A stretch of DNA of 64,000 bases, taken from positions 124,001 to 188,000 of IMG/VR virus record IMGVR_UViG_3300023049_000005. One strand, given 5' to 3'. Position numbers and translations under genes: made by a program. The notes beneath the pieces were generated by a model. That model searched no databases, was not told the origin of the DNA, and saw only the letters and a list, made by a program, of their open reading frames with translations. The stretch's first letter is position 1. Each line of letters starts with the position of its first letter. Shown here piece by piece: positions 15,101 to 58,898 of this stretch.

Positions 15101-15726
15101 GAATAATCACTATCTATATAATCATATATTTTAATAGCATTAACGCCATTAGCTGTAACATTCGTATACTGATTCGGATCATTAATAACACCACCACTTT
15201 GATTTATGAACTCTCTGTTATTAGTCCCTGTTATAATCATCACAGCGTTGGTTTTAGTACTAATTACTGTATATGTTTCTTTACTATTGATACCAAATAT
15301 ATCTCTACTGAATTTAATTTCCTCGCCTTTTCTAAAAATGGTATTAATTGCTTGACCGTATATCCACTTTGAAAAGAAGTCTTTCCTATCATTAACTGCC
15401 TCTACTTTAGTAACACCTATACTACTAGTGTTGCCTATTATTGACATACCATTAGTATTGAAAAGTTGGAACTTTTCTGTGGATAATTCATCAGTCTTAG
15501 TATCAGAATTATATTGCTGATAGTCAAATCCTCTTATTCTTTCGAATGTACTTATTTCTAGATTCTTGAATGTGTCTGAACTATTTTCTTCAAAGTATAA
15601 TTTACCTTTGTAATAACCTAGTTCTTCGTCGAATAATATGTTAATAGGATTGCCTTTTTTGTTGTAAAAGACATAATCTCTATTGAACCAATTTTGATCA
15701 CATGTATTAATTTTAATAGTAGACAA
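9127..15726 (-). CDS. Large virion structural protein, probably baseplate wedge (contains a beta-propeller-like region)
   Basis: 2199 aa, N/D/T/S-rich; 'YLGAYRSIINAINYFGY' wedge-like segment; YVTN-like repeats; CBM5/12-like 'W...Y..GDKVDY' motifs. Confidence 0.55.
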   Translation of the reverse strand: MSTIKINTCDQNWFNRDYVFYNKKGNPINILFDEELGYYKGKLYFEENSSDTFKNLEISTFERIRGFDYQQYNSDTKTDELSTEKFQLFNTNGMSIIGNTSSIGVTKVEAVNDRKDFFSKWIYGQAINTIFRKGEEIKFSRDIFGINSKETYTVISTKTNAVMIITGTNNREFINQSGGVINDPNQYTNVTANGVNAIKIYDYIDSDYSNNFPNWSEPNFYNLIYSGQKLNLVNLENNDDTIVTINSKTLGDNYYTDFKLMMDDFDNNLKIRVTNKTNNILLYNGNINIVATGSYIGLSSSVNTLIKPNSKLTIPNSNNNVGTITVDSTQISTFNRINQYYFNGGLTPSDASKVLFNNQIYSCVTSYTQSATSSITPEDNDFWEETKYLPIVESINDETINGTLYLETNSVDLSYTYDNNINAISNINNAFTIHSDSINQLGLYSDIDPLGEFVRLRSLYPTNYVDVKFFVDKVDSFSGSITDGTNFSPTGYTFSYDPHPETNVSVTVNGTNVITTETLTSPTGYVFFSDDAASTATKFNELTNDSGLYWQEINANFGLTATDIVNVNYTTEVSSKERTIERIIEIEETLNNEDRDDYAERNEERIVFNDIDDFGISIRINNQVYVIESTIITRGNGSEDTEESIDITLKAFVEKWKLELDKRGIYVDSEYFGNNNVNVLHNSLYFRTAYPNVLMNINRIDVGANTDYSILDKYIIFYQLGGDNTQLSININNINYITGFDTDVETTLGNWIIQHTEVLNDNGIYVDREFNNLIINKKTNFVIDININVGRFFYEGEQVFEIINYSKGYEGLIISSNKVVQNNNNISFEDECFSTGQIVSINNTDWTLVNQEYNIIQLDPDRMVFSYQGAFWGTSNNSTQNAFFNLAFGEDFEIGDTILYIDSGSFSTASVTKVAKNFYQAADGNQVITIERENAFYYDESAISLTASFNPDDIKYLTLNSNLVDIDYLNSTFKNIALTDQVNLISSTFRVEDTISSIEAPIMQSMNPFNNLLYVLSDNFVYVIDPYLNQIKSTVSNLGIGWDMEVDYITGETYISFTDSDRIMIIDPVDFSFISFDFQANYNWNKMTYNRDEEAMYIFGRQNLDIGITSDKILYKVNTDTKVVFGDFLIDGITASNIGVGSTGSTPSYLGLERESGELHYNPYNGSMYVANDGELNKINSDSTFTSFGISTNNYYSITLDNFNKYFWINNEEGKLVSISEIDIIADNLDITDHGFIFTSPNDSHIYIATQNQEIKVFSTYVNQVFFTLNVDFNVDKININKSTNDIYGINLNNNQILSIDVDFIYELKAFSNIFNLSSQASASTPFDTNGSETYGSLSEDNDTSLDDYIKLKTREFIRRPRKNYMTDGAPQATWEYRWENTEDEILKELFMYDVTGDFLESTGSYSYTGTKPLPNPIIKRKPNRDLNLVDEGYAQQTIFNNLTYTLDYNDSEENISFTPVSIQTFIGFNSKTEGVINNILNIYEDEDIKFTFPSYDSFTNSEFSVTLPDQEFTFTHDSENNRGIITLSSNSTDTFNQIVDLDNLTGTSTNFNENQFLNIRVLDTTNDVGYVSSNDNINVKIIQLFERELIVEYLDDNTFTNETTAVEYPSEGTTTYLDLTLEVIKKKVAEFDIYAQTEIEDERFKNELTNIGKIINPEDIYIFKDYDINEGGIDWTFMNEKRKELLTVKNDIYNYLGAYRSIINAINYFGYNDLILYEYFQNINVDSAEFLKLFKVEVEDIFNNDIDGWTDNYKFYQFPNPNYEETKLFNLTYRITDFEGNKLITYSIEEAIIKLEGLKYWLEKNIIPLTHEIKDITGELSFLSIDQNFDTSSSIKVFETNDTMSEIDFNIEESYVMPIQNGSTVYTTIIDFLTASNDSPDYFTLGVKTYKTYDKWEAFNSYNTGDKVDYFGKIYENVLEDEGNVVLNFNNTPLEFQEVDTWDVNTLYEDSNVVKYKRRFYKYSLRTTTVNYLPWVGASGSCLVGTPDSRNGVDDNLYNDLLDLLGNEPDTPNYLRIEEDMIANNFDVLDIIRSNYPNRWCDLLDRDESLLTDISIDLLNLPETQYEGTKPANSIEARTMILNLRKDYNKTKDLYKVKEREISPQENILLENTDFILWDDVTKWAEIDLEMVQSFKEYRSGENMFLPYNFTLDSSIDPYVVVEIRAENGYGQNRTVKRSYEIRFDADDSAILETVPTV

Positions 15727-28897: not shown

Positions 28898-29938
28898 ATG
28901 AAAGATTATTACAATATATTAGGTGTCAGTAAAGACGTATCTGATGCAGAATTAAAGAAAGTATATAGAAAGTTATCTAAGAAGTATCACCCTGATATTT
29001 CAAAAGAAGCTAATGCTGAAGATAAATTCAAAGAAGTATCTGAGGCATATGAAGTACTTTCTGATTCTCAGAAAAGACAAAAATATGATAGAGGTGGATC
29101 TAATGATCCATTCGGAGGCTTTGGTGGCTTCGGTGGAGATCCATTCGGAGATATGTTTGGTGACTTCTTCGGTAACAAGAGAGCATCTAGAACAAGGGAT
29201 AATACTAATTTAGATATTGTTTTGGATGTGGATCTTACTTTAGATGAAGTAGAACTAGGTGGCACTAAGAAGATTAGATACAAAAGAACTATGAATTGCC
29301 AAACTTGTAAGGGAGAAGGTGGTGATGGTTCTTCTACTTGTAGCTCTTGTAATGGAAGAGGAAGAAGGGTAGAAAGGGTTCAAACACCCATGGGGATATT
29401 ACAGACAGAAACCATATGTCCTAATTGTGGCGGTTCGGGTCAAACTATTGCTAATACCTGTAATAGCTGTCATGGAAAAAGCAGAGAAGAAAAATTCGAA
29501 GAAACGGTTGTTAACTTTGGTAAAGGTGTTTCAGAATCCATGAAGTATAAATATAACGGTAAAGGACATCAGAGAAAAGGAAGAAAGGGAGATTTGTATA
29601 TTCGTTTTGTTATCAGGAATCATCCTATATTTAAAAGAAACGACACAACTCTCATACAAGAAGTAACTGTTCCTTTTAATGTCCTAATGTTAGGTGGTGA
29701 AATTACTGTATCAGGGTTAAATGGGAAAAGTTATAAGTTGAATGTTCCTAAACTTTCTAGAACGGGAGCATCGTTAAGACTTAAAGATAAAGGATTACCT
29801 TATTCGGAAGGACAATTAAGAGGCGATATGATCGTAGTATTGAATATAGATTTACCTAAAGAGCTAACAGAAGAAGAAATTGGTATAATCGAGCAACTGA
29901 ACGAAAAGGATAATTTTATATATAATATTAAAAAGTAA
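28898..29938 (+). CDS. dnaJ: Chaperone DnaJ (full length)
   Basis: J-domain HPD, G/F region, four CxxCxGxG-type repeats, C-terminal domain. Confidence 0.95.
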   Translation: MKDYYNILGVSKDVSDAELKKVYRKLSKKYHPDISKEANAEDKFKEVSEAYEVLSDSQKRQKYDRGGSNDPFGGFGGFGGDPFGDMFGDFFGNKRASRTRDNTNLDIVLDVDLTLDEVELGGTKKIRYKRTMNCQTCKGEGGDGSSTCSSCNGRGRRVERVQTPMGILQTETICPNCGGSGQTIANTCNSCHGKSREEKFEETVVNFGKGVSESMKYKYNGKGHQRKGRKGDLYIRFVIRNHPIFKRNDTTLIQEVTVPFNVLMLGGEITVSGLNGKSYKLNVPKLSRTGASLRLKDKGLPYSEGQLRGDMIVVLNIDLPKELTEEEIGIIEQLNEKDNFIYNIKK

Positions 29939-29944
29939 ACAATT

Positions 29945-30148
29945 ATGTTAAATATAAAAGTAGATGATAAGGGCAGTAAGAACGCTATAGAGAAAGCCTT
30001 AAAGCAATATAAGAATAAGGTAAGAGATACTAAAATGATGGATAAACTTAGAGAAAAGAAAGAATACAAAAAGAAATCTGTTAAAAGAAGAGAAGAAATC
30101 AATAAAGCAGTATACGTAGAGAAAAAATTTAAATCTAATGATCAGTAA
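29945..30148 (+). CDS. rpsU: 30S ribosomal protein bS21
   Basis: 'IEKALKQYKNKV......LREKKEYKKKSVKRR' S21 signature. Confidence 0.85.
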   Translation: MLNIKVDDKGSKNAIEKALKQYKNKVRDTKMMDKLREKKEYKKKSVKRREEINKAVYVEKKFKSNDQ

Positions 30149-33958: not shown

Positions 33959-34043
33959 GGCTGAGTGGTGGAATTGGTAGACACGTTGGACTTAAAATCC
34001 AATGGGCATTGCGCCCGTGCGGGTTCGACTCCCGCCTCAGCTA
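33959..34043 (+). tRNA. tRNA-Leu (TAA)
   Basis: GGCTGAG/CTCAGCT acceptor, TTGGA-CT TAA AA-TCCAA, long variable arm, GGTTCGA T-loop; no encoded CCA. Confidence 0.95.
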
Positions 34044-34048
34044 CAAAT

Positions 34049-34801: not shown

Positions 34802-34990
34802 ATGAAATTTGAATTAGATAAACATCAGTTAAAAGAAATTGATCAATGGAAACAAAAGATCAAAGAGAAACACGGTAAATATGGTCATTTCGATTATATT
34901 TTTACACCCTTTGGTGCAGGAACAGGTGTTAAAATTTATAGCCACTTAGAGAAAGAATATCTAGATGTAAGTGATACACAAGATTGGTAA
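34802..34990 (+). CDS. Hypothetical small protein
   Basis: MKFELD...YIFTPFGAG...LDVSDTQDW. Confidence 0.65.
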   Translation: MKFELDKHQLKEIDQWKQKIKEKHGKYGHFDYIFTPFGAGTGVKIYSHLEKEYLDVSDTQDW

Positions 34991-34991
34991 T

Positions 34992-36275
34992 ATGTATAAA
35001 GGCGAAGATAAATATATTTTGGTAATGTTGCCCTATCCTAGTGGTAGTGGATTACATGTTGGTCATTCCTATTGTTATGCTTTAATGGATAGTTACTGCA
35101 GATGGAAAAGGTATATGGGGGAATCTGTGTTCCAACCATTTGGTTATGATAGTTTTGGGTTGCCTGCTGAATTATATGCTGACAAAGTAGGTAGAGATCC
35201 AAAAGAAGTCACACAAGAAAACATAGAGAACTTTAGGAAACAGATGGATCATATGAATACCATGTTTGAGGAAAAATTGATCACATCCGATCCTTCTTAT
35301 CAAAAATGGAGTCAGTTCATATTCGATGTCATGAAAAAAAGTGGATTGGCTTATAAAAAATTTGGGGAAACTAGTTATTGTCCAAGTTGTAAAACTACAT
35401 TGGCGAATGCTCAAATAATAGATGATTATTGTGAACGTTGTTCCTCTAAAATAGAACAGACTGAATCAGAACAATGGTACTTTAAAATCACTGATTATAT
35501 CGATAGATTGGAAAAGAACTTAGATGAAATTGATTACCCATCTAAGACCATTAAGCAACAAAGACATTGGTTGCAGAATATGAGAGAGAATAATATCGAT
35601 TGGTGTGTTTCTAGACAAAGGAAATGGGGCTGTCCTATTCCGATTGAGGGGGAAGAAGATACCTTGGATACATTTGTTGATAGTAGTTTCTACTTCATTA
35701 GATATTGTGATCCTGATAATACAGAAGAAATTTGTAGTAAAGAAAACTTTAAACAAGTTGATTTATGTATAGGTGGTAACGAACATGCTTGCGCACATTT
35801 GGTATATGCTAGATTCATGATGATGGTATTATATGATAATGGTTATGTACCTGTTGAAGAACCCTTTAAGAAAGTTGTCCATAATGGGATGATTACTAAG
35901 GATGGTTATAAGATGTCTAAATCTAAAGGTAATGTTGTTGATCCAAATGATTATGACCCAAATGAATTGAGAATGTACTTGATGTTTATCGGTCCTTACA
36001 CACAGGGTGGTGATTGGGAAGATAGCAAGATCAAAGGCATCAGAAGGTTTATTGGTAGATGGGATAGATGGATGGAAACTGCCGAAGAAAACGGAGAAGG
36101 ATTAAATGATATTAATGAATTGGAAGAAACTATTGATGATTATATGAATAGTTGGAAATTCAATAAAGTTATTTCCTCATTGATGGAATACTATAATAAG
36201 AACAAGAACAATACTATTAGTACTGATAGTAAAGAGAAGTTGAATAAGATATATAATTGTTTTAAAACAAAGTAA
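34992..36275 (+). CDS. leuS: Minimal leucyl-tRNA synthetase (no CP1 editing domain)
   Basis: MLPYPSGSGLHVGH (HIGH), GYDSFGLPAE, Zn knuckle, QWYFKITDY, DWCVSRQRKWGCPIP, DTLDTFVDSS, GGNEHA..HL.YARF, KMSKS; about 427 aa from ATG 34992. Confidence 0.9.
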   Translation: MYKGEDKYILVMLPYPSGSGLHVGHSYCYALMDSYCRWKRYMGESVFQPFGYDSFGLPAELYADKVGRDPKEVTQENIENFRKQMDHMNTMFEEKLITSDPSYQKWSQFIFDVMKKSGLAYKKFGETSYCPSCKTTLANAQIIDDYCERCSSKIEQTESEQWYFKITDYIDRLEKNLDEIDYPSKTIKQQRHWLQNMRENNIDWCVSRQRKWGCPIPIEGEEDTLDTFVDSSFYFIRYCDPDNTEEICSKENFKQVDLCIGGNEHACAHLVYARFMMMVLYDNGYVPVEEPFKKVVHNGMITKDGYKMSKSKGNVVDPNDYDPNELRMYLMFIGPYTQGGDWEDSKIKGIRRFIGRWDRWMETAEENGEGLNDINELEETIDDYMNSWKFNKVISSLMEYYNKNKNNTISTDSKEKLNKIYNCFKTK

Positions 36276-36276
36276 T

Positions 36277-37206
36277 ATGAAAGAATATATTTTCGAAAAA
36301 GGGAAAAGGGTATATAAGTTAACCGATGAGGGTATCTTATATAATAAACTTAAAGTTAATCCGATAAAGAGAATAAATCGCTTCAAGAAAGTAAAGATAC
36401 CGAAGGTGAATCCTCATCAAATTGTTATCGGTGGTGGATCTTATAACAGGAAAGTGTTTTATTATGAATTATACCACGACACCAAATTAAAAGAAGGTGA
36501 AACAGTTAGATTCAAAAACAAAATAGGAGATTACTCTAAGTCTAACCTTTTACTTAAAATGATATCAGAAAATGATCCTCCTTATTTTAGAAATATAGAT
36601 AAAAAAATATACCACTATAACTACAAGAATATTTTAATAGGAATATATGACAGTCAATATAAAGCTAGTCTTGGAACAGGTATAAACCAATCTTGTATTT
36701 CACAACGTCTACGAGGTAAAATAAATACATCTAGGTTTGTGGATTATTCATATATGGTATATGATGGCGACGAATTATTAGACAGATATAGTGATTATAA
36801 CCAATCGGGCATAAACACTGTTGTCCAAATGGACTTAGATGGTAACGTGTTGAATAAATTTGGCAATGCAAAGGATGCCGCAGACATTTTCGAGTTAGGA
36901 ACGTGTGCAGAATCACATATTGTGAAATGTTGTAGGAAAAAGAGAGAAAAGGCTTATGGGTATAGGTGGTCATATTCTTGCGATTACAGAAAGAGAATGA
37001 AGAAAATGGTAGTTAAGTATAACAAAGATGGAGATCCTATTGCTATTTATAAGAATAGACAAGATGCTGTCAAGAATATGCCTATACTCAAATCATATTT
37101 ATCTTTAGTAATAAACGGTAAAATCAACCCTAAAAAATTTAGCATCAAAGAAGTTAGTTATGATGCGGGATTAAGTATAAGAAACAAATTGGTTGAGGAA
37201 GTTTAA
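36277..37206 (+). CDS. NUMOD1/IENR1-repeat protein, degenerate HNH homing-endonuclease-like
   Basis: Three 'V.QY..DG..I..F.S..DA' type repeats; HNH-like region lacks the His/Asn residues. Confidence 0.6.
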   Translation: MKEYIFEKGKRVYKLTDEGILYNKLKVNPIKRINRFKKVKIPKVNPHQIVIGGGSYNRKVFYYELYHDTKLKEGETVRFKNKIGDYSKSNLLLKMISENDPPYFRNIDKKIYHYNYKNILIGIYDSQYKASLGTGINQSCISQRLRGKINTSRFVDYSYMVYDGDELLDRYSDYNQSGINTVVQMDLDGNVLNKFGNAKDAADIFELGTCAESHIVKCCRKKREKAYGYRWSYSCDYRKRMKKMVVKYNKDGDPIAIYKNRQDAVKNMPILKSYLSLVINGKINPKKFSIKEVSYDAGLSIRNKLVEEV

Positions 37207-38180: not shown

Positions 38181-38252
38181 GGACTGTTAGCTCAGAGACA
38201 GAGCAGATGGCTGTTAACCATCAGGTCGGGATCTCGGAATTCCCACAGTCCT
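38181..38252 (+). tRNA. tRNA-Asn (GTT), atypical T-arm
   Basis: GGACTGT/ACAGTCC acceptor; GATGG-CT GTT AA-CCATC; T-loop CTCGGAA; U discriminator. Confidence 0.75.
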
Positions 38253-38344: not shown

Positions 38345-38426
38345 GCCTTCGTGGTGGAATTGATAGACACGCTAGATTTAGAATCTAGTTCCGTGAGGAG
38401 TGCAGGTTCAAGTCCTGTCGGGGGTA
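38345..38426 (+). tRNA. tRNA-Leu (TAG)
   Basis: CTAGA-TT TAG AA-TCTAG, variable arm. Confidence 0.92.
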
Positions 38427-38433
38427 CAAATAT

Positions 38434-38520
38434 TCTTGGGTTGCCGTAGTGGTCGAACGGTCCTGACTGTTAATCAGGTGAGTTAATACTCCATCGTAGG
38501 TTCAAATCCTACCCCAAGAG
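38434..38520 (+). tRNA. tRNA-Asn (GTT) with long variable arm
   Basis: TCTTGGG/CCCAAGA, CCTGA-CT GTT AA-TCAGG, 17-nt variable region. Confidence 0.85.
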
Positions 38521-38523
38521 CAT

Positions 38524-38607
38524 AGAGAAGTGGTGAAATGGGTAAACACAGGAGGATCAAAACCTCTCGCCTTTAGGGGCTTGCGAGTTCGAGTCTCGCC
38601 TTCTCTA
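38524..38607 (+). tRNA. tRNA-Leu (CAA)
   Basis: AGAGAAG/CTTCTCT, GGAGG-AT CAA AA-CCTCT. Confidence 0.88.
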
Positions 38608-38612
38608 CATAT

Positions 38613-38783: not shown

Positions 38784-38868
38784 GCTAATGTCGCATAGTT
38801 GGTCGATTGCACTCCCCTTGTAAGGGAGAACTGAAAAGACATCGGGGGTTCGAATCCCTCCATTAGCT
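38784..38868 (+). tRNA. tRNA-Thr (TGT) with extended variable region
   Basis: GCTAATG/CATTAGC, CTCCC-CT TGT AA-GGGAG. Confidence 0.85.
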
Positions 38869-38876
38869 CAAAATAT

Positions 38877-39139: not shown

Positions 39140-39223
39140 ATCCCTATGGTGTAATTGGTGACATCCTTGTTTTACATGCAAGAGACGTGAAGTATAATCT
39201 TGGTTCGAGTCCAAGTAGGGATA
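39140..39223 (+). tRNA. tRNA-Val (TAC) with extended variable region
   Basis: ATCCCTA/TAGGGAT, CTTGT-TT TAC AT-GCAAG, 16-nt variable region. Confidence 0.82.
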
Positions 39224-39230
39224 CAAATAA

Positions 39231-39464: not shown

Positions 39465-39550
39465 GTCGGTGTGACCTGAGTGGCGAAGGGTGTGGACTGC
39501 AAATCCATAGAACGAAAGTTCCATCGTAGGTTCGAGTCCTACCACCGACT
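39465..39550 (+). tRNA. tRNA-Cys (GCA) with long variable arm
   Basis: GTCGGTG/CACCGAC, GTGGA-CT GCA AA-TCCAT, gaac-gaaa-gttc variable stem, U73. Confidence 0.88.
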
Positions 39551-39620
39551 CTAAGTAGTATTATAGTACATTAAGTTATTTTTACTATATTTGTAAAAAT
39601 AAACCAACAAAACTTTCATT

Positions 39621-41058: not shown

Positions 41059-44000
41059 ATGACTCAAAGTGGGATGATAAAGGGGAAACAGATTAATATT
41101 GAAAGTATTAATTTAATACCAAACGAAAGCCCTTTAGCTTTAACTTCTTTTACCGTATCTACGGCATCTACGACATTTAGTGGAAAACAGATTATCAATT
41201 TAGAGTATTTAAACGATCAATTAGATTTAAAGATTGATATTACTCAAATAAACGATAATGCTACTTCTTCTACTTCTTCGTTATGGAGTGCTGATAAGAT
41301 ATATACTGAGATAACAGGATTAAGTCAATCAATCGATTCTGTTAGTATAAGTATATCAAATATACTGAATGATTTTATCACGGGATCTACTACAGGGTGG
41401 AGTTCTGAGAAAATTGATGAAGAATTAATTACATTAGAGAATAGTGTTAATATTAAAATTGATTCAGTAAGCATAAGTGTTGCTAATTTACTAAATGATT
41501 CAATCACAGGATCAACAACGGGTTGGTCTTCTGAGAAGATTAATAATGAGCTTGATTTAAAACTCGATGACAGCCAATTAAATGATGCAGCAGCCACGTC
41601 ATCTACTACATCATTGTGGAGTGTGAATAAGATATATACTGAATTACAAGCCATCGAAGCTAATGATTTACAAATAAATGACAATGCTACAAGTTCTACA
41701 ACTTCATTATGGAGTGCTAATAAGATATACACAGAGATACAAGGACTAAGTTCATCTGTTGATGCTAGAATTGATATAATAAATATCAGTGTATCTAATA
41801 TTGAAGGTGATATCATAGGTCTAAGTAATTCAATTGATAGTTTAAGTGTAAGTGTAGCCGATAACACAGCTAACATCGATTCTGTTAGTATAAGTGTTGC
41901 TAATATCTTAAACGATGGTATCACAGGATCTACAACAGGGTGGAGTTCTGAGAAAATAAACAACGAGTTAGATCTTAAATTAGATGATAGTCAGCTAAAT
42001 GATAGTATAATAGGTACTCTTTCTTTATGGAGTAGTGATAAGATAAGCAGTGAAATACAAGGGTTAAGTTCTTCTGTAAATACTAGAATAGACACCGTAA
42101 GCGCAAGTGTGATCGGTTTAAGTCAATCGGTTGATTCTCTAAGTCAAAGTGTAGCTACTAATACTACAAACATCGATTCAGTTAGTATCAGTGTAGCCAA
42201 CCTACTTAATGATAGTATCACAGGTTCAATAACAGGATGGAGTTCTGAGAAAATTGATGAAGAATTAATTACATTAGAGAATAATATTAATAGTCAATTA
42301 GATCTTAAATTAGATGACAGTCAGTTAAATGATACTATAGTGGGTACTGATTCTTTATGGAGTAGTGATAAGATAGATAGTGAGATACAAGGATTAAGTT
42401 CCTCTGTTAACACTAGAATAGATACCGTAAGTGCTAGTGTCATTGGATTAAGTCAATCAGTTGATTCGATAAGTATCAGTGTTACTAACAATACTAGTAC
42501 TATTACGGGATTAAGTCAATCTATTGATGTGATAAATGTTACTATTTCTAATATAGAAGGTGATATTACAGGATTAAGTCAGTCAATTGACTCAGTAAGT
42601 ATTAGTGTAGCTAACCTTCTTAATGACTCAATAACAGGTTCTACAACAGGTTGGAGTTCTGAGAAAATTGATGAAGAATTAATTACATTAGAGAATAATA
42701 TCAATAGTCAATTAGATCTTAAATTAGATGTTAGTCAATTAAATGATGCGGCTGCAACAAGCTCAACTACTTCATTGTGGAGTGTGAATAAGATTTATAC
42801 TGAATTACAAGCTATTGAAGCTAATGATCTACAAATAAATGATGCTGTTACTGCAACAGATAGTGTTTGGAGTTCTAATAAGATAGACAACGAACTAGAT
42901 CTTAAAGTAGACAAAACACAAATAGACGATGGTGGTACAGGTACTACATCGTTGTGGAGTGTGGATAGACTGTTGACTGAATTCGAATTAAAACTAGATG
43001 TTAGTCAATTAAATGATAGTATTATATCAGCAACGGGTCTATGGAGTAGTGATAAGATAAGCAGTGAAATACAAGGATTAAGTTCTTCTGTAAATACTAG
43101 AATAGACACCGTAAGTGCAAGTGTGATCGGTTTAAGTCAATCAGTAGATTCATTAAGTCAAAGTGTTGCTACTAATACTACAAACATCGATTCAGTTAGT
43201 ATCAGTGTAGCTAATATACTTAATGATAGTGTTACAGGTTCAACAACAGGATGGTCATCAAATAAGATAGATAGTGAGTTAGATTTTAAATTAGACGACA
43301 CACAATTAAACGATGTTGTTATAGGAACAAACTCATTATGGAGTTCTGATAAAATTAACAGTGAGGTACAAGGTTTGAGTTCTTCTGTGTATGCTGAAAT
43401 AGATTCTGTAAGTATAAGTGTCGCCAATCTATTAAACGATAGTATCACAGGATCAACAACAGGTTGGACATCACAAAAAATTGATAGCGAATTAGATCTT
43501 AAGCTAGATGTTAGTCAATTAAATGATGCGGCTGCAACAAGTTCTACTACCTCTCTTTGGAGTGTGAATAAAATTTACAACGAATTACAAGCTATTGATG
43601 CAGACCATCTACAAATAAATGACAATGCTACAAGCTCTACAACTTCTGTTTGGAGTGGTAATAAAGTTTATACTGAAATACAAGGATTAAGTTCTTCTGT
43701 ATATGCCGAAATAGATTCTGTTAGTATTAGTGTGTCTAATCTTCTTAATGATAACATTACGGGATCAACAACGGGTTGGTCTTCTGAGAAAATTGATGAA
43801 GAATTAATTACATTAGAGAATAATATTAATATTAAAATTGATTCAGTAAGCATAAGTGTTGCTAATTTACTAAATGACAGTATTACGGGATCAACAACAG
43901 GTTGGTCTTCTGAGAAGATTAATAGTGAACTTGATTTAAAACTAGATGATAGTCAATTAAATGATGTTGCTGCAACAAGCTCTACTACATCACTATGGAG

Positions 44001-47000
44001 CGTTAATAAAATTTATACTGAATTACAAGCTATTGATGCTGATCATCTACAAATAAACGATAATGTAACAAGCTCTACTACATCAGTATGGAGTGGTAAT
44101 AAAGTTTACACAGAGATACAAGGATTAAGTTCTTCTGTTAACACTAGAATTGATACAGTGAGCGCAAGTGTTATAGGATTAAGCCAATCAGTAGATTCAT
44201 TAAGTGTGAGTGTTTTTAATAACACCACTACTATAACAGGATTAAGTCAGTCAATTGATTCAGTAAGTATTAGTGTAGCTAATTTATTGAACGATTCAAT
44301 TACAGGATCTACTACAGGATGGTCTTCACAAAAGATAAACGATGAACTTGATCTTAAACTAGATGATAGTCAGTTAAATGATAGTGCTGCTACTAGTTCT
44401 ACTACTTCTTTGTGGAGCGTGAACAAGATCTATAATGAATTAGAATTAAAGCTTGATGATAGCCAAATCAATGACGCTGCTACTAGTTCTACTACCTCAT
44501 TATGGAGTAGTGATAAACTATATACTGAATTCGAAAACAAACTTGATACAAGTTTAACTAATAGTTACATTTTCTTAGGGTCACCACAAAATGTAGCAAC
44601 TCCTACCGAAACTGAAAAAATTTATATAAGCAGTGTTAGTGATGTACCATTAACAGAAGAATACTTATTCTTAAATGGGAACACAGTTACATTAGCTCAG
44701 AAAATAGAAAGTAATTTCCAAATTGCCGAAAGAACACAACAAGGTTGGATGGTTAGTAAAAGAAATGTCAATGAAGAAGTTATATTTGATATAGACGTAT
44801 CTTCTGCTTCTCTATTTAATACTGCATCAAACGAACTAGATATAAGTAATTACACAGGGGTTGATTCCTTAAATATCATAGATAGTACAACATCATCTCC
44901 TATATCAATAACTATATCTTCAATATCAGGTCTAGAAAGTGGTTATAATATAAACTTACGTTTAGAAGGACAGGGATCTATAACATTTGAAAACACATCT
45001 GCAACAGCAGCTAGTGTGGGGGATTTAATTTTATTTAATGATGAGAATAGAACGATAGTGGGTGGAACATATTCACAGGGTATAAATATTAAGAATAAAA
45101 ATGGTGTCAATTTAGAAATAGACCCACAATTTGATATTATAATAGACCAAGTAAATAGTAATATCAACGATAGTACAACATCGTCTACTACATCAGTATG
45201 GAGTGCTAACAAGATTTACACAGAATTACGAGCTATTGATGCTGATCATCTACAAATAAACGATAATGCAACAAGCTCTACTACATCAGTATGGAGTGGT
45301 AATAAAGTTTACACAGAGATACAAGGATTAAGTCAATCGATAGACAGTGTGAGTATTAGTGTAGCTAATATCTTAAATGATAGCATTACAGGATCTACTA
45401 CGGGATGGAGTTCACAAAAGATAAATAATGAACTCGACCTAAAACTAGACGACACTCAGTTAAATGATAGTATAATAGGTACTGATTCTTTATGGAGCAG
45501 TGATAAAATAAATAGTGAAGTGCAAGGTTTGAGTTCTTCTGTGAATTCTAGAATAGATACTGTAAGTGCTAGTGTAATAGATAACACAAACACTATAATA
45601 GGTCTAAGTAGCTCTGTTGATTCTTTAAGCCTGAGTGTATTTAATAACACAACCGATATTACAGGATTAAGCAATTCAATAGACATTATTAATGTTACTA
45701 TCTCAAATATAGAAGGTGATATTATAGGACTGAGCAATTCTATCGATAGTGTTAGTATTAGTGTGTCTAACTTATTAAATGATAGTATAACTGGTTCAAC
45801 AACAGGTTGGACTTCACAAAAGATTAACAATGAGTTAGATCTTAAATTGGATGATAGTCAATTAAACGATGCTGCTGCTACAAGTAGTACTACATCATTA
45901 TGGAGTGTGAATAAGATATATACTGAATTACAAGCCATTGATGCTAACGATCTTCAAATAAATGATAATATAACAGCTACGGATAGTGTTTGGAGTTCTA
46001 ATAAGATAGATAGCGAAATACAAGGATTAAGCTCATCTGTAAATACTAGAATAGACACAGTGAGCGCAAGTGTGATTGGTTTATCCCAATCAGTAGATTC
46101 ATTAAGTGTGAGTGTATTTAATAACACTACTGATATTACAGGATTAAGTCAATCTATTGATTCTGTTAGTATAAGTGTTGCTAATATCTTAAACGATGGT
46201 ATCACAGGATCTACAACAGGGTGGAGTTCTAATAAGATAGACAGTGAACTTGATCTTAAACTAGATGTTAGTCAATTAAATGATAGTATAATAGGTACTC
46301 TTTCTTTATGGAGTTCAGATAAGACTAACACAGAGATACAGGGGTTAAGTTCTTCTGTAAATACTAGAATAGACACCGTAAGCGCAAGTGTGATCGGTTT
46401 AAGCCAATCAGTAGATTCATTAAGTCAAAGTGTTGCTACTAATACTACAAACATCGATTCAGTAAGCATAAGTGTAGCTAATATCTTAAATGATAGCATC
46501 ACAGGTTCTACTACGGGATGGAGTTCTGAAAAGATAGATAACGAACTTGATCTTAAACTTGATGATAGTCAATTAAATGATGCTGCTGCGACGAGCAGTA
46601 CAACTTCGCTATGGAGTGTGAATAAGATTTATACCGAGCTACAAACTATTGATGCTGATCATTTACAAATAAATGATAACGCAACAAGCTCTACTACATC
46701 AGTATGGAGTGGCAACAAAGTTTATACAGAGATACAGGGATTAAGCTCATCGGTATACGCTGAGATTGATTCAGTAAGCATAAGTGTATCTAATCTTCTT
46801 AATGATAGTATTATAGGTTCAACAACAGGATGGACTTCACAGAAGATAAGTGATGAACTTGATCTTAAACTAGACGACACTCAAATCAATGACACGGCTA
46901 CTAGTTCAACTACTTCTTTATGGAGTAGTGATAAATTATATACAGAATTCCAAGGTAAATTGGGTACAGGATTAACCGAGAGTTATATATTCTTAGGTTC

Positions 47001-50000
47001 TGTGGGAAATATAGCTACTGAAACACCAACTGAAAAAATATATCCGATAAACGACAACGATGTTCTATTGACCGAAAGCTATTTGGCTCAATTTAGAAGT
47101 GATTTAAGTATCGGTCAAAAAGTAGAAACGGTTAATCAAATAGCCGAGAAGACTCCAAATGGTTGGTCAATTATAAAGAAAAACATTAACGAAGACTTAA
47201 TATATGATATTGATATATCTAATTCTAGTAATTATACTATTTCTTCAAATGAATTAAATATAAGTGATTACTTAGGTGTAGACACTTTAAATATTATAGA
47301 TGGTTCAACATCATCACCATTTTCTATAACAGTATCAACTATTGCAGGACTTTATGCTGATTTCAAAATTAGGTTTACTGTGGACACGGGTGGGGAAGTT
47401 ACTTTTGAACACACTGACTTGGCTACTGCGTCTTTTGATGATATAGTATTATCAAGTGGGGTAAATAAAACTATCACAGGAAGTACTTATAGTGATTATT
47501 TATCTATACAAAAAATAGATATAATAAATAAAGAAACGGATTTATCTTCTGATAGTATAACAAGTAATATAACAAATAATATTAGTAATAGTATCAATGA
47601 TGGTACTACTAGTTCTACTACATCACTTTGGAGTGCTAATAAGATATATACTGAATTACAAGCTATTGATGCTGATCATTTACAAATAATCGACAGTGTT
47701 ACTAGCTCTACTACTTCTGTTTGGAGTGGTAACAAAGTCTACACAGAGATACAAGGATTGAGTTCATCTATATTTGCTGAAATAGATTCAGTAAGTATTA
47801 GTGTGTCTAATCTTCTTAACGATAGTATTACGGGTTCTACAACAGGGTGGACATCACAAAAGATAAGCAATGAACTTGACCTTAAACTAGATGATACTCA
47901 AATCAATGACACAGCTACTAGTTCTACTACATCATTATGGAGTAGTAATAAATTATATACAGAATTTGAAAATAAATTAGATACAGGATTAACAGAAAGT
48001 TATATTTTCCTTGGTAATACAGCCAATGAATCAAGCAGAGTTCCAACATCTAAATTATACATAGATAACGTTAGTACAGATATACTAACAGAGACTTATG
48101 TGTCCAATAATTATTCCACTGCTTCAATAGGACAAAAGGTTGAGGCTAGTGACCAAATAGCAGAAAAGACACAAACCGATTGGATGATATCTAAGAAGAA
48201 TCACAACCAAGACATAGTTAAAGATCTAGATATATCTTCTGCTTCTTTATTTGCTACTTCTTCTAATCAAATGAACATTACACAATTCATTGGTGTGGAC
48301 ACTATAAACATAATTGATAGTAGCACTTCTTCTTTTTCTGCTACAATATCTACTATATTTGGATTGTTTGATAGATCTAGTGTTAAATTTAAAGTCACAA
48401 CAGGCGGTAGCGTAACATTTGAACATACAGACATAGCCTCTGCTTCTTTTTATGATATTAGCTTACTTAGTGGAGGAAATGTTACAATAATTGGAAGCAC
48501 ATATAGTGAGTTTTTAAGGTTACAAAAAATTAATAATATTAACATCGAAGAAGATAATGTGTCTTTAGGTGTCGGATCAGTAACTATAAATGATAGTTCT
48601 ACTAGTTCTACAACAGAAACATGGAGTGCCGATAAGATATACACAGAGATAACAGGTATATCTGCCTCTTTAAGCTCGGAGATAAACGATTCGATAACAG
48701 CAACAGATAGTACGTGGAGTAGTGATAAGATACAGACAGAAATAGATGATTCTAGTTTATATACATCAAACGGTACAATATCTTCTCCTAGGACAATATA
48801 TGGTAACGAAACACAATTAATATTAGATGGTGGTCAATTTGAGATTTGGGAAGGAATCGATACAACCGAGTATGGTGTTATTTTAAGAGAAAGTGGTGGT
48901 GGTATTAGAGGACAATTTGTATATGATGCGCTATCTAATACAACTAAACTCGAATTATTAAACGGAACAAGTAGTTTCTTCTTAGCTAATGGTGGAACTG
49001 TTAGTGTTAAAGGTGCATTCACTATTGATGATGACGATAATTCACATTATTTACAATTCTCAGCAGGATCGTTAACACAAAGTTTAACTTATGTTTTCCC
49101 TTCAGATTATGGAACGGATGGTCAAGCACTTATAACAGATGGTTCGGGAACATTAGATTGGATTACGGTTGCTACTAATTCACTTAGTATAAATGATAGT
49201 TCTACTAACTCTACTACTGAGGTATGGAGCGCAGATAAGACATATACAGAGATACAAGGTTTGAGTTCTTCTGTGTTTGGTGAAATTGATTCTGTTAGTA
49301 TTAGTGTATCTAATCTCCTTAATGATAGTATTACAGGTTCAACAACAGGTTGGACATCTCAAAAAATTAATAACGAACTAGATCTTAAACTAGATGATAC
49401 TCAGTTAAATGATGCGGCTGCTACTAGTTCTACTACATCTTTATGGAGTGTGAATAAGATTTATACAGAATTAGAATTAAAACTTGATGATAGTCAATTA
49501 AATGATGCTGTTACTGCAACAGATAGTGTTTGGAGTTCTAATAAGATAGACAACGAACTAGATCTTAAAGTAGACAAAACACAAATAGACGATGGTGGTA
49601 CAGGTACTACATCGTTGTGGAGTGTGGATAGACTGTTGACTGAATTCGAATTAAAACTAGATGTTAGTCAATTAAATGATAGTATTATATCAGCAACGGG
49701 TCTATGGAGTAGTGATAAGATAGATAACGAACTAGATCTTAAACTAGATGATACTCAGTTAAATGATGCGGCTGCTACTAGTTCTACTACTTCATTGTGG
49801 AGTGTGAATAAGATTTATACAGAACTAGATTTAAAACTAGACGATAGTCAGTTAAATGATACAATAACAACGACTAATTCATTATGGTCTTCAGACAAAA
49901 TAGATACCGAGTTAGACCTTAAGTTAGACGATACTCAGATTAATGATTCTGCTACAAATGTAAATATTTTATGGTCTTCTGATAAAATAGATACCGAGTT

Positions 50001-58509: not shown

Positions 58510-58898
58510 TCTACATCAGCTTCTTTTAACCACATATCTAAATTATTAGCTAAATTATCAATAGTTGTTTCTACATATAGATTATAAAATTCTGTGCTTA
58601 GATCTTCATCAAAACAAGAAGGACATTTGTAGTCATAATCCGCAGCATAGGATTGACTCACCATTAGATTAAAGTCCTTATCATAAACATATACCACAGT
58701 AGTATCGAAAGAAATACCGTAGGAAACATCATTCCTACGGTATAATCGATCAGTGTCATTATAATCAGGTCTATGTACGTCTGCGTTTTCAACGTACCCA
58801 CAACCTAACTTATCGAATTTAGAGAAGATATTGGCTTCTATCCAATTGATCTTTTCCATATAATTAAACACATCTTCTCTTTTATTAACTATATTCAT
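58482..58898 (-). CDS. Hypothetical protein
   Basis: 138-aa ORF. Confidence 0.6.
   Translation of the reverse strand: MNIVNKREDVFNYMEKINWIEANIFSKFDKLGCGYVENADVHRPDYNDTDRLYRRNDVSYGISFDTTVVYVYDKDFNLMVSQSYAADYDYKCPSCFDEDLSTEFYNLYVETTIDNLANNLDMWLKEADVDYTSSEPSS

What the first reader, a model, noticed from the sequence alone, without database searches (positions are those of the whole stretch)
34992..36275. Minimal (~427 aa) leucyl-tRNA synthetase lacking CP1 editing, Leu-specific and C-terminal domains
Seen: all class-I catalytic motifs are intact (HVGH, KMSKS). The CP1 insertion is replaced by a few residues ('QQRHWLQNMRENNIDWCVSRQR'), 'GCPIP' joins almost directly to 'EDTLDTF', and the protein ends shortly after the start of the helical anticodon-binding domain. 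Known: bacterial LeuRS is about 800-950 aa, and natural CP1 loss (Mycoplasma mobile) gives error-prone charging. Inference: a natural urzyme-like synthetase, possibly specific for the three phage tRNA-Leu species, or repurposed.
Basis: partly seen in the sequence, partly recalled or inferred. Interest (0 to 1): 0.75.

Follow-up and report, generated by a model that had tools for sequence, protein, structure and literature searches.

The report
Miniature phage leucyl-tRNA synthetase family
A 270-kb lake-water phage encodes an intact, strongly conserved leucyl-tRNA synthetase about half the normal size, lacking both the proofreading domain and the tRNA-gripping tail thought essential in bacteria, and it belongs to a large family found almost only in huge phages, usually beside tRNA-Leu genes.

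Summary
ORF 34992-36275 (+, 427 aa, TAA stop) is a bacterial-type LeuRS core. HVGH, KMSKS, the leucine pocket, the zinc finger and the DWxxSRQRxWG motif are intact. Absent are the N-terminal ~30 residues, CP1 (8-residue linker), E. coli segment 435-483, the Leu-specific domain (TKDG instead) and everything after E. coli residue 767.

It is neither a pseudogene nor an artefact:
- dN/dS is 0.055 against its closest relative.
- Independent samples carry the same gene end.
- At least 120 protein clusters of 405-442 aa and 58 viral loci (contigs up to 608 kb) share the architecture.
- The AlphaFold model (pLDDT 93.5) superposes 420-425 of 427 residues on E. coli LeuRS 29-767.

No missing module is encoded elsewhere in the genome, and no neighbouring gene is conserved. 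tRNA-Leu genes are enriched next to the gene.

Most likely it is a stand-alone, editing-free LeuRS that charges tRNA-Leu during infection. The tension is that deleting the C-terminal domain abolishes charging in E. coli and Thermus LeuRS, so a repurposed Leu-AMP enzyme remains a serious rival. "Urzyme-like" is an overstatement. I found no description of this family in the searchable literature: a new variant of a known kind.

The parts
34992..36275 (+). Mini-LeuRS gene, 427 aa plus a TAA stop
   Evidence: ORF list and sequence. TIGR00396 leuS_bact scores 363 bits in four stretches. Best PDB sequence match is 3ziu. AF2 model has pLDDT 93.5. VIA-align Z is 34-37 on Ec LeuRS 29-767. dN/dS is 0.055.
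35055..35066 (+). HVGH signature (residues 22-25), the ATP-binding motif of class I synthetases
   Evidence: Aligned to Ec H49-H52. H22, G24 and H25 are invariant in 118 family members.
35349..35483 (+). ZN domain (residues ~120-164 = Ec 149-193), with a four-Cys knuckle C130, C133, C147, C150
   Evidence: Alignment. The Cys are at least 90% conserved and R149 is invariant. In E. coli this domain holds tRNA bases 74-75 in the synthetic site (PMC13454842).
35574..35597 (+). Eight-residue linker QNMRENNI (residues 195-202), in place of the ~186-residue CP1 editing domain (Ec 233-418)
   Evidence: Most family members have only four residues here (consensus). M. mobile LeuRS has a nonapeptide at this position (PMC3643597).
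35598..35630 (+). DWCVSRQRKWG motif (residues 203-213 = Ec 419-429)
   Evidence: D203, W204, S207, R208, Q209, R210, W212 and G213 are invariant in the family and in all 12 sequences.
35643..35648 (+). Junction I218/E219, where Ec 435-483 is missing. M. mobile LeuRS and the 508-580-aa phage forms keep this insertion.
35895..35906 (+). TKDG (residues 302-305), in place of the Leu-specific domain (Ec 574-617)
   Evidence: The GKDG tetrapeptide of M. mobile LeuRS at this position is a minimal functional substitute for the Leu-specific domain (PMC3643597).
35910..35924 (+). KMSKS signature (residues 307-311)
   Evidence: Aligned to Ec K619-S623. K307, M308 and K310 are invariant, and S309 is at least 90% conserved.
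36021..36272 (+). Truncated helical module (residues 344-427 = Ec ~660-767): four helices of the anticodon-binding domain. The protein ends where full-length enzymes have the L-x-P-F-x-P-H motif.
   Evidence: Secondary structure of the model, with pLDDT 96-98 in this part. Alignment. Pfam Anticodon_1 matches only profile positions 5-52 of 148.
33959..34044 (+). tRNA-Leu(UAA), 86 nt, long variable arm, discriminator A, no encoded CCA. It lies 947 nt upstream of the gene.
   Evidence: ARAGORN, Rfam 61.3 bits, sequence.
38345..38427 (+). tRNA-Leu(UAG), 83 nt, discriminator A, no encoded CCA
38524..38608 (+). tRNA-Leu(CAA), 85 nt, discriminator A, no encoded CCA

Best explanation
The gene encodes a stand-alone, editing-free miniature leucyl-tRNA synthetase. 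It belongs to a clade found almost only in large phages.

Proposed mechanism:
1. The intact Rossmann-fold active site (HVGH, KMSKS and the same leucine-pocket residues as E. coli LeuRS) binds leucine and ATP and forms leucyl-adenylate.
2. [quoted passage not shown] Leucine is then transferred to A76.
3. There is no CP1 domain, so mischarged products are not hydrolysed.

Likely substrates are the phage's own tRNA-Leu(UAA/UAG/CAA). These carry the A73 leucine identity base. They are encoded without CCA and can be matured by the phage's own CCA-adding enzyme. Host tRNA-Leu may also be charged.

The benefit would be extra Leu-tRNA supply for an AT-rich (30% GC) phage during infection.

What is shown: the architecture, the conservation, purifying selection, the predicted fold, the absence of partner modules in the genome, phage restriction, and the tRNA-Leu linkage.

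What is inferred: adenylate formation (strong inference), transfer to tRNA without the C-terminal domain (moderate inference), and the physiological role (weak inference).
For: Identity as LeuRS:
- Best family is leuS_bact at 363 bits, against 151 bits or less for Val/Met/Ile models.
- Best PDB matches are all LeuRS.
- M12, L13, P14, Y15, D53, S231, Y234, E264, H265 and H269 are identical to Ec M40, L41, P42, Y43, D80, S496, Y499, E532, H533 and H537.

Fold:
- pLDDT is 93.5 and pTM 0.92.
- 420-425 of 427 residues superpose on Ec 29-767 at 1.8-2.8 A.

Selection:
- dN/dS is 0.055 (dS 0.47), and 0.09-0.14 against the next relative.
- 173 columns are at least 90% conserved. The window copy deviates at 9, like its whole subclade.

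Family:
- At least 120 clusters of 407-440 aa.
- 58 IMG/VR loci with ORFs mostly 405-442 aa.
- The mini forms are monophyletic.
- ESM Atlas clusters are 95-97% viral.
- Only one small contig among ~185,000 species genomes shows the mini form.

tRNA-handling elements are retained and conserved (ZN domain, SRQR motif, TKDG), while editing is lost (PMC13454842; PMC3643597).

tRNA-Leu linkage:
- 47 of 97 tRNAs within 2 kb are Leu, against 17 of 106 at 2-8 kb (Fisher p = 9e-7).
- The nearest tRNA is Leu in 11 of 24 loci (p = 6e-4).
- Five tRNA-Leu genes lie upstream of the independent 508-aa form.

Genome context:
- It is the only synthetase found among the families searched.
- 19 tRNAs read AT-rich codons.
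- The phage encodes a CCA-adding enzyme, bS21 and DnaJ and an Rnl1-type RNA ligase.

Precedents:
- M. mobile LeuRS is active without CP1 and the Leu-specific domain (PMC3643597).
- C-terminal deletion does not impair human cytosolic LeuRS (PMC3561953).
Against: [quoted passage not shown] This protein additionally lacks the last part of the helical domain.
- It scores below the curated leuS_bact cut-off (363 against 548 bits).
- About 34 of 58 related loci have no tRNA within 8 kb, so the linkage is not universal.
- In the window copy, the residue equivalent to Ec E169, which contacts C75, is Ala. The family consensus keeps Glu.
- There is no biochemical data and no expression evidence for this locus.
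- The protein-tRNA complex prediction was not run by the tool.
Confidence: 0.55

Rival explanations
1. Repurposed adenylate-forming enzyme. The protein still makes Leu-AMP but no longer serves general tRNA-Leu charging. It would transfer leucine to another acceptor (a special tRNA, a small molecule or a protein), or act as a leucine/ATP-dependent regulator. This would resemble other truncated synthetase paralogues: GluQRS/YadB, MshC, and Sulfolobus LeuRS-I, which binds tRNA-Leu and makes Leu-AMP but does not aminoacylate.
For: - The C-terminal tRNA-elbow-binding domain is lost, and its deletion abolishes charging in E. coli and Thermus LeuRS (PMC3561953).
- LeuRS-I is a precedent (PMC9437257).
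- The mini clade plus its sister sit on a long stem branch (0.71 changes per site), which suggests a functional shift.
- More than half of related loci have no tRNA nearby.
- One subfamily is fused to a dephospho-CoA-kinase domain.
- These phages carry unusual tRNAs.
Against: - All modules that handle the tRNA 3' end are kept and conserved (ZN domain, SRQR motif, KMSKS loop with TKDG hinge, stem-contact fold).
- tRNA-Leu genes specifically are enriched beside the gene.
- No conserved partner or acceptor gene lies nearby.
- The leucine pocket is unchanged.
Confidence: 0.25
2. Catalytic subunit that needs a partner in trans. tRNA binding would be supplied by another protein, either a host factor (even host LeuRS or its C-terminal domain) or an unrecognised phage protein. 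This would be analogous to the two-subunit LeuRS of Aquifex aeolicus, or to Arc1p/Trbp111-type cofactors.
For: - The Aquifex enzyme is naturally split, and its beta subunit binds tRNA (cited in PMC3561953 and PMC3643597).
- The mini protein lacks the elbow-binding domain.
- Most genes of this phage have no known function.
Against: - No LeuRS C-terminal, CP1, insertion or N-terminal module is detectable anywhere in the 270-kb record. The whole-family model found only this gene, and domain-specific HMMs on six-frame translations gave all E > 0.2.
- There is no Trbp111-type tRNA_bind domain.
- No neighbouring gene is conserved across 58 loci; the largest other cluster covers 9 loci.
Confidence: 0.12
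3. Decaying pseudogene, an assembly artefact, or a gene interrupted by the downstream homing-endonuclease-like ORF with its 3' part lost.
For: - The ORF directly downstream (36277-37206) has NUMOD1/HNH-endonuclease-like features.
- The protein is about half the usual LeuRS length.
Against: - dN/dS is 0.055.
- The orthologue in a 635-kb phage has the same end point with no endonuclease neighbour, as do more than 100 further family members.
- Contigs from independent lake samples span the gene and the stop/next-gene junction without indels.
- Nothing LeuRS-like lies downstream or elsewhere in the genome.
Confidence: 0.02

Closest known systems
Mycoplasma mobile LeuRS (PDB 3ziu), the smallest characterised natural LeuRS (~637 aa)
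   Same: It is a bacterial-type LeuRS core. CP1 is replaced by a short peptide (a nonapeptide there, eight residues here). The Leu-specific domain is replaced by a (G/T)KDG tetrapeptide. It is the best sequence and Foldseek match. It charges tRNA-Leu without post-transfer editing (PMC3643597).
   Different: M. mobile LeuRS keeps the N-terminal segment, the Ec 435-483 insertion, the complete anticodon-binding domain and the C-terminal tRNA-binding domain (chain range 32-546 of 621). The phage protein lacks all four and is ~210 residues shorter. It also belongs to a separate, phage-specific clade.
Canonical bacterial LeuRS (E. coli, T. thermophilus, N. gonorrhoeae; TIGR00396 leuS_bact)
   Same: The same catalytic residues, ZN domain, SRQR motif, KMSKS loop and stem-contact fold. 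420-425 of 427 residues superpose on Ec 29-767.
   Different: Five modules are missing: the N-terminus, CP1, Ec 435-483, the Leu-specific domain, and Ec 768-860. It scores below the curated family cut-off. In these enzymes the C-terminal domain is required for charging (PMC3561953).
LeuAC urzyme (engineered 129-residue LeuRS core from P. horikoshii)
   Same: Both lack the editing domain and the C-terminal tRNA-binding parts. Both raise the question of the minimal catalytic unit.
   Different: The urzyme removes the entire connecting peptide and the anticodon-binding domain, and it is an artificial archaeal-type construct (PMC10450160). The phage protein is natural, bacterial-type and 3.3 times larger, and it keeps the ZN domain, the stem-contact fold and four helices of the anticodon-binding domain.
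Truncated or non-charging synthetase paralogues (GluQRS/YadB, MshC, Sulfolobus LeuRS-I)
   Same: A class I catalytic domain retained with loss or alteration of tRNA-binding or editing parts. Leu-AMP formation without charging is documented for LeuRS-I (PMC9437257).
   Different: Those paralogues coexist with a canonical synthetase in a cell. Here the gene is viral, linked to tRNA-Leu genes, and keeps the residues that hold the CCA end.
Aminoacyl-tRNA synthetases of huge phages (Al-Shayeb et al. 2020, PMC7162821)
   Same: Huge phages are reported to carry up to 15 synthetases and many tRNAs. Two genomes of that study (LR745206, LR756501) encode mini or CP1-less LeuRS forms.
   Different: The main text of that paper treats them as synthetases related to those of the hosts and does not describe the reduced architecture. 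Its supplementary files were not checked.

Membership tests
Bacterial-type leucyl-tRNA synthetase (TIGR00396 leuS_bact) | Class I signatures HIGH and KMSKS in a Rossmann fold | tested here: met
   HVGH is at residues 22-25 and KMSKS at 307-311. Both are invariant or nearly invariant in the family. The fold is confirmed.
Bacterial-type leucyl-tRNA synthetase (TIGR00396 leuS_bact) | Closer to LeuRS than to the other class Ia enzymes; leucine-pocket residues present | tested here: met
   leuS_bact scores 363 bits, against ValRS 151, MetRS 145 and IleRS 121. Ten pocket/catalytic residues are identical to E. coli.
Bacterial-type leucyl-tRNA synthetase (TIGR00396 leuS_bact) | Whole-protein score above the curated equivalog cut-off (548.4 bits) | tested here: not met
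   363.3 bits in four stretches.
Bacterial-type leucyl-tRNA synthetase (TIGR00396 leuS_bact) | CP1 editing domain inserted after the ZN domain | tested here: not met
   Ec 233-418 is replaced by eight residues. No CP1 is encoded elsewhere in the genome.
Bacterial-type leucyl-tRNA synthetase (TIGR00396 leuS_bact) | Complete anticodon-binding domain plus the C-terminal domain that binds the tRNA elbow | tested here: not met
   The protein ends at Ec 767 of 860. No C-terminal module is found elsewhere.
Bacterial-type leucyl-tRNA synthetase (TIGR00396 leuS_bact) | Leucylation of tRNA-Leu | not testable with these tools
   The complex prediction was not folded. A biochemical assay is needed.
CP1-less LeuRS of the Mycoplasma mobile type | CP1 replaced by a short linker, and the Leu-specific domain replaced by a xKDG tetrapeptide | tested here: met
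   QNMRENNI and TKDG (PMC3643597).
CP1-less LeuRS of the Mycoplasma mobile type | Retains the full anticodon-binding domain and C-terminal domain (~600-640 aa) | tested here: not met
   427 aa. The 3ziu alignment ends at chain residue 546 of 621. See also the alignment with 626-638-aa relatives.
Class I synthetase urzyme (LeuAC) | ~130 residues: protozyme plus the second urzyme half only, with no connecting peptide and no anticodon-binding domain | tested here: not met
   427 residues with the ZN domain, the stem-contact fold and four helices of the anticodon-binding domain (PMC10450160).
Split two-subunit LeuRS (Aquifex aeolicus type) | A second gene encoding the remaining C-terminal part | tested here: not met
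   No such ORF is found in the 270-kb record. No neighbouring gene is conserved across 58 loci. The record is estimated to be 89% complete, so absence is not absolute.
Non-charging synthetase paralogues (GluQRS, LeuRS-I type) | Makes the aminoacyl-adenylate but does not charge the cognate tRNA's 3' end | not testable with these tools
   Sequence data cannot separate this from true charging. Retention of the CCA-holding elements argues weakly against it.

The most novel reading that the evidence does not exclude
The mini-LeuRS is not a slimmed housekeeping enzyme but the protein half of a phage-private charging system. Having lost the elbow-binding C-terminal domain, it would recognise tRNAs by the acceptor end alone. 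It would then leucylate a non-standard set of phage tRNAs. Candidates are the short-arm (type I) tRNA-Leu genes common beside it in related huge phages, or even A73-bearing long-arm tRNAs with non-Leu anticodons, such as the 85-nt tRNA(UAC) in this window. That would give the phage a naturally orthogonal synthetase/tRNA pair, or a means of altering decoding.
Probability: 0.12. Interest if true: 0.85.

Novelty: new variant of a known kind. Interest (0 to 1): 0.6.

Why it matters
LeuRS is one of the best-studied synthetases. Its editing domain and its C-terminal tRNA-binding domain are regarded as functionally important, and the latter as essential in the bacterial enzymes tested.

Here is a natural family that is widespread, under strong purifying selection, lacks both domains and still sits beside tRNA-Leu genes.
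- If it charges tRNA, it defines the smallest natural LeuRS and shows a recognition mode independent of the C-terminal domain. That bears on the minimal requirements for tRNA-Leu identity, on the evolution of class I synthetases by module gain and loss, and on compact or orthogonal synthetase/tRNA pairs for synthetic biology.
- If it does not charge tRNA, it is a new phage-specific synthetase-derived enzyme whose function is unknown.

Either outcome can be tested directly with standard assays. It also means that 'tRNA synthetase' counts in huge-phage genomes cannot be taken at face value.

Tried and rejected
- Stop-codon recoding or read-through. The stop is TAA and the downstream frame is noise. 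An 'open frame 654 aa' entry was not reproduced by direct translation and is unexplained.
- Split gene or endonuclease interruption. Rejected: orthologues end at the same place without the endonuclease, and no C-terminal piece exists.
- Conserved partner gene. All-against-all comparison of ORFs within 8 kb across 58 loci found none.
- Trans-acting tRNA-binding protein of the Trbp111 type. None found.
- Protein-tRNA complex prediction (window protein with an unaltered CCA-bearing tRNA-Leu from L026). The tool did not fold it, so it gives no evidence either way.
- Expression evidence. No RNA run holds the locus. The two RNA runs offered carry only short, 80-90%-alike pieces of relatives, including a 1.4-kb contig that looks like a mini-type relative. 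RNA libraries can contain DNA, so this is not counted.
- Host or donor assignment from the nearest cellular LeuRSs. It is inconclusive: Clostridia, Kiritimatiellales, Peribacteria and Gemmatimonadota all sit at 44-49% identity over the N-terminal half.
- An initial guess of a crAss-like phage. Dropped in favour of a T4-like toolkit (UvsX-like, SbcC-like, Rnl1).
- Four literature searches for a prior description of the mini architecture found none. The library does not cover all journals.
Full report
**1. The observation**

The window has an ORF at 34992-36275 on the + strand (427 aa from the ATG). An alternative GTG start at 34971 overlaps the upstream ORF, which ends at 34990. The stop is TAA, and translation beyond it in the same frame is a string of stops. 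Alternative genetic codes or read-through therefore do not rescue a longer protein.

Family and structure scans all point to LeuRS:
- Pfam finds tRNA-synt_1g and tRNA-synt_1, and only a marginal Anticodon_1 match covering profile positions 5-52 of 148.
- NCBIfam gives leuS_bact at 363 bits in four stretches, below its 548-bit cut-off. ValRS, MetRS and IleRS models score 151 bits or less.
- The best solved relative by sequence is the CP1-less LeuRS of Mycoplasma mobile, 3ziu.

**2. Exact anatomy**

I aligned the protein with E. coli LeuRS, taken from the K-12 record, and with relatives.

| Mini-LeuRS | E. coli LeuRS | Content |
|---|---|---|
| absent | 1-30 | N-terminal segment |
| 3-202 | 31-232 | HVGH at 22-25; ZN domain with Cys130/133/147/150 |
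| linker QNMRENNI | 233-418 | CP1 editing domain, absent |
| 203-218 | 419-434 | DWCVSRQRKWG |
| absent | 435-483 | insertion, absent |
| 219-305 | 484-573 | second half of the catalytic core |
| TKDG | 574-617 | Leu-specific domain, absent |
| 306-427 | 618-767 | KMSKS at 307-311, stem-contact fold, four helices |
| absent | 768-860 | end of the anticodon-binding domain plus the C-terminal domain |

Ten residues that form the leucine/adenylate site in E. coli are identical here: M40, L41, P42, Y43, D80, S496, Y499, E532, H533 and H537.

- More of the helical domain survives than 'shortly after the start'.
- The N-terminus is also missing.
- Lack of the Leu-specific domain is common among bacterial LeuRSs. 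At that position, the GKDG tetrapeptide of M. mobile has been shown to be a minimal functional substitute (PMC3643597).

**3. Fold**

An AlphaFold2 model built on a 121-sequence alignment is very confident (mean pLDDT 93.5, pTM 0.92).
- Foldseek ranks 3ziu first (TM 0.88-0.89 normalised by the query), followed by all other bacterial LeuRS structures.
- VIA-align superposes 420-425 of the 427 residues on E. coli LeuRS residues 29-767 at 1.8-2.8 A, with Z of 34-37.

The protein is thus the LeuRS core with its inserted and appended modules removed. It is not a fragment that would be expected to misfold.

**4. Not a pseudogene, not an artefact, not a split gene**

- Against its closest relative (95% identical protein, a Logan contig), dS is 0.47 and dN/dS is 0.055. 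Against a 76% relative, dN/dS is 0.09-0.14.
- At 173 columns that are at least 90% conserved in the family, the window copy deviates at 9. Its whole subclade shows 9-12, so this is lineage divergence, not decay of one copy.
- Contigs from two other lake-water samples cover the gene and the stop/next-gene junction with 0-3 differences and no indels.
- The downstream ORF 36277-37206 is NUMOD1/HNH-endonuclease-like. However, the 422-aa orthologue in the 635-kb phage LR745206 ends at the same place with an unrelated neighbour.
- The full leuS_bact model finds nothing else in the 270,756-bp record.
- HMMs built separately for the missing N-terminus, CP1, Ec 435-483 and Ec 760-860 find nothing in its six-frame translation, with all E > 0.2.
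- There is no tRNA_bind (Trbp111-type) domain.
- The record is estimated to be 89% complete, so absence is strong but not absolute.

**5. A large, phage-specific family**

- The word-index search returned at least 120 clusters of 407-440 aa at 59-76% identity, some on contigs of 200-487 kb.
- IMG/VR holds 58 loci on contigs up to 608 kb. Their ORFs are mostly 405-442 aa.
- ESM Atlas clusters of 387-444 aa are 95-97% viral.
- A scan of ~185,000 species-representative genomes found one mini-type match, on a 2.9-kb contig binned with a Bacteroidota MAG. All other hits were ordinary LeuRSs matching in pieces.
- In the exhaustive representative search, the next relatives are 530-, 569- and 580-aa proteins, followed by full-length enzymes.

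The tree gives the following picture:
- The mini forms are a clade (SH-aLRT 96).
- Their sister is a 526-537-aa group that has the same truncated C-terminus but keeps a remnant of the editing domain (PF13603, 74 bits).
- Together the two groups have support of 100 and sit on a long stem (0.71 changes per site).
- This suggests that the C-terminal domain was lost first and CP1 afterwards.
- The 508-aa CP1-less, C-terminally truncated protein of the 735-kb phage LR756501 falls elsewhere on a long branch. That may indicate an independent reduction, but the placement is weak.

**6. Context**

- No neighbouring gene is conserved across the 58 loci.
- tRNA-Leu genes are enriched near the gene. 47 of 97 tRNAs within 2 kb are Leu, against 17 of 106 at 2-8 kb (Fisher p = 9e-7). 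The nearest tRNA is Leu in 11 of 24 loci that have any tRNA (binomial p = 6e-4 against a 16% baseline).
- About 34 loci have no tRNA within 8 kb, so the linkage is frequent but not universal.
- In LR756501, five tRNA-Leu genes lie directly upstream of the gene.
- In the window's own genome, this is the only synthetase found among the class I (I/L/M/V, E/Q) and class II (G/H/P/S/T; D/K/N) families searched.
- The genome has 19 tRNAs, all for A/T-rich codons, in a 30% GC genome.
- The three tRNA-Leu genes have discriminator A and no encoded CCA. The phage encodes a CCA-adding enzyme.
- Ribosomal protein bS21, a complete DnaJ and an Rnl1-type RNA ligase are also in the window.
- The sequence comes from lake-water metagenomes.

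**7. How it most likely works**

The active site is that of a LeuRS, so leucine activation to Leu-AMP is a strong inference.

The elements that hold the CCA end in the synthetic site of E. coli LeuRS are all retained and conserved in the family:
- the ZN domain, which contacts bases 74-75 (PMC13454842)
- the SRQR segment
- the KMSKS loop with a flexible xKDG hinge (PMC3643597)

Taken with the tRNA-Leu linkage, this favours a true tRNA-Leu ligase without editing, as in M. mobile.

The difficulty is the missing C-terminal domain. [quoted passage not shown] Deleting it does not impair the human cytosolic enzyme (PMC3561953).

I therefore put the charging model at about 0.55. A repurposed Leu-AMP enzyme gets about 0.25; Sulfolobus LeuRS-I, which activates leucine and binds tRNA but does not charge, is a precedent (PMC9437257). 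A partner-dependent catalytic subunit gets about 0.12. Pseudogene or artefact gets about 0.02.

**8. Comparison with known systems**

- **What it works like.** It most likely works like M. mobile LeuRS.
- **Canonical LeuRS membership.** It fails three defining features of the canonical family: CP1, the C-terminal domain and the curated score.
- **M. mobile type.** It fails one defining feature of that type, the retained anticodon-binding and C-terminal domains.
- **Urzyme.** It is not an urzyme. LeuAC has 129 residues and lacks the whole connecting peptide and the anticodon-binding domain (PMC10450160).
- **Huge-phage synthetases.** These are known (PMC7162821). I found no description of this reduced LeuRS architecture in four full-text searches or in that paper's main text. 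NCBIfam and PHROGs have no dedicated model. Sources name it 'leucyl-tRNA synthetase' or 'class I tRNA ligase family protein'.

**9. Verdict**

This is a real, conserved, phage-specific miniature LeuRS. I rate it a new variant of a known kind, with interest 0.6.

The side observation on tRNAs deserves its own follow-up. It covers long-variable-arm versions of Asn, Thr, Val, Cys and Lys tRNAs, and short-arm tRNA-Leu genes in related phages.

Noticed in passing
window 38434-38521, 38784-38869, 39140-39224, 39465-39551 (also G000:C1:73357-73445, outside the window): Long-variable-arm (85-89 nt) versions of tRNAs that are normally short: Asn(GUU), Thr(UGU), Val(UAC), Cys(GCA) and Lys(UUU). Most sit next to a normal 75-nt twin with the same anticodon and the same discriminator base. 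ARAGORN draws a 4-5 bp extra arm, and Rfam confirms them as tRNAs (47-57 bits). Related huge-phage loci have 23 such long tRNAs that are not Leu, Ser or Tyr (for example Asn, Cys, Met, Arg, Ile, His). One literature search found no description.
   Followed up: partly
L006 3012-3164; L008 7779-7853; L010 5937-6642; L012 6800-7174; L026, L027, L028: 24 of the 64 tRNA-Leu genes near mini-LeuRS genes in related phages are short (74-78 nt, no long variable arm). They often sit beside long ones with the same anticodon, and 21 of the 24 keep discriminator A. Type I tRNA-Leu charged by LeuRS has a precedent in Streptomyces coelicolor (PMC6614811). The window's own three tRNA-Leu genes are all long-armed.
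   Followed up: partly
window 38181-38252 (+): A 14th tRNA, found by Rfam (46.8 bits) but missed by ARAGORN: a third tRNA-Asn(GUU) with a degenerate 9-nt T-loop.
   Followed up: partly
window 28898-29938 (+) and 29945-30148 (+): Phage-encoded full-length DnaJ (J domain, CxxCxGxG zinc domain, C-terminal domain), directly followed by ribosomal protein bS21 (Pfam 32 bits). The same pair is seen near the mini-LeuRS in a relative (L067).
   Followed up: partly
window 58885-60087 (-): T4 Rnl1-type RNA ligase (RNA_lig_T4_1 plus T4_Rnl1_C), the enzyme class that repairs tRNAs cut by host anticodon nucleases. The genome also carries four tRNA-Lys genes.
   Followed up: no
window 36277-37206 (+); L006 3219-3989: An ORF with NUMOD1 and HNH-endonuclease-like features starts one base after the mini-LeuRS stop. 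In the 735-kb phage, an ORF whose sequence looks GIY-YIG-like (not scanned against any family library) sits between the tRNA-Leu array and its LeuRS. Mobile endonuclease genes seem to frequent this locus.
   Followed up: partly
window 41059-52905 (+) and 9127-15726 (-): Two giant ORFs (3948 and 2199 aa). The 2199-aa one has no PHROG match at E <= 1e-5. The 3948-aa one was not searched.
   Followed up: no
G000:C1:251048-251434 (outside the window): A 390-aa ORF with a PolyA_pol/CCA-adding nucleotidyltransferase domain (106 bits). This fits the fact that all three tRNA-Leu genes lack an encoded CCA.
   Followed up: partly
P0206 (616 aa; its cluster also includes contigs up to 75 kb): A family member with an N-terminal dephospho-CoA-kinase (CoaE) domain, residues 4-176, fused in frame to a mini-LeuRS. 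Whether this is a true fusion or a gene-calling artefact was not checked.
   Followed up: no
P0002, L060 7980-9560, L063 5307-6920: The sister group of the mini clade (526-537 aa). It has the same truncated C-terminus but keeps a ~100-residue remnant of the editing domain, with the TTxPxT and GTGxVMxVP motifs. It looks like an intermediate in the reduction.
   Followed up: partly
L005 7315-8913: The 635-kb phage LR745206 encodes a 532-aa ORF that begins with an HIGH-type class I synthetase signature and looks GlnRS/GluRS-like by eye (no family scan was run). It sits downstream of a Pro/Asp/Gln tRNA array and about 2 kb downstream of its mini-LeuRS. Synthetase genes there are embedded in tRNA arrays.
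   Followed up: no
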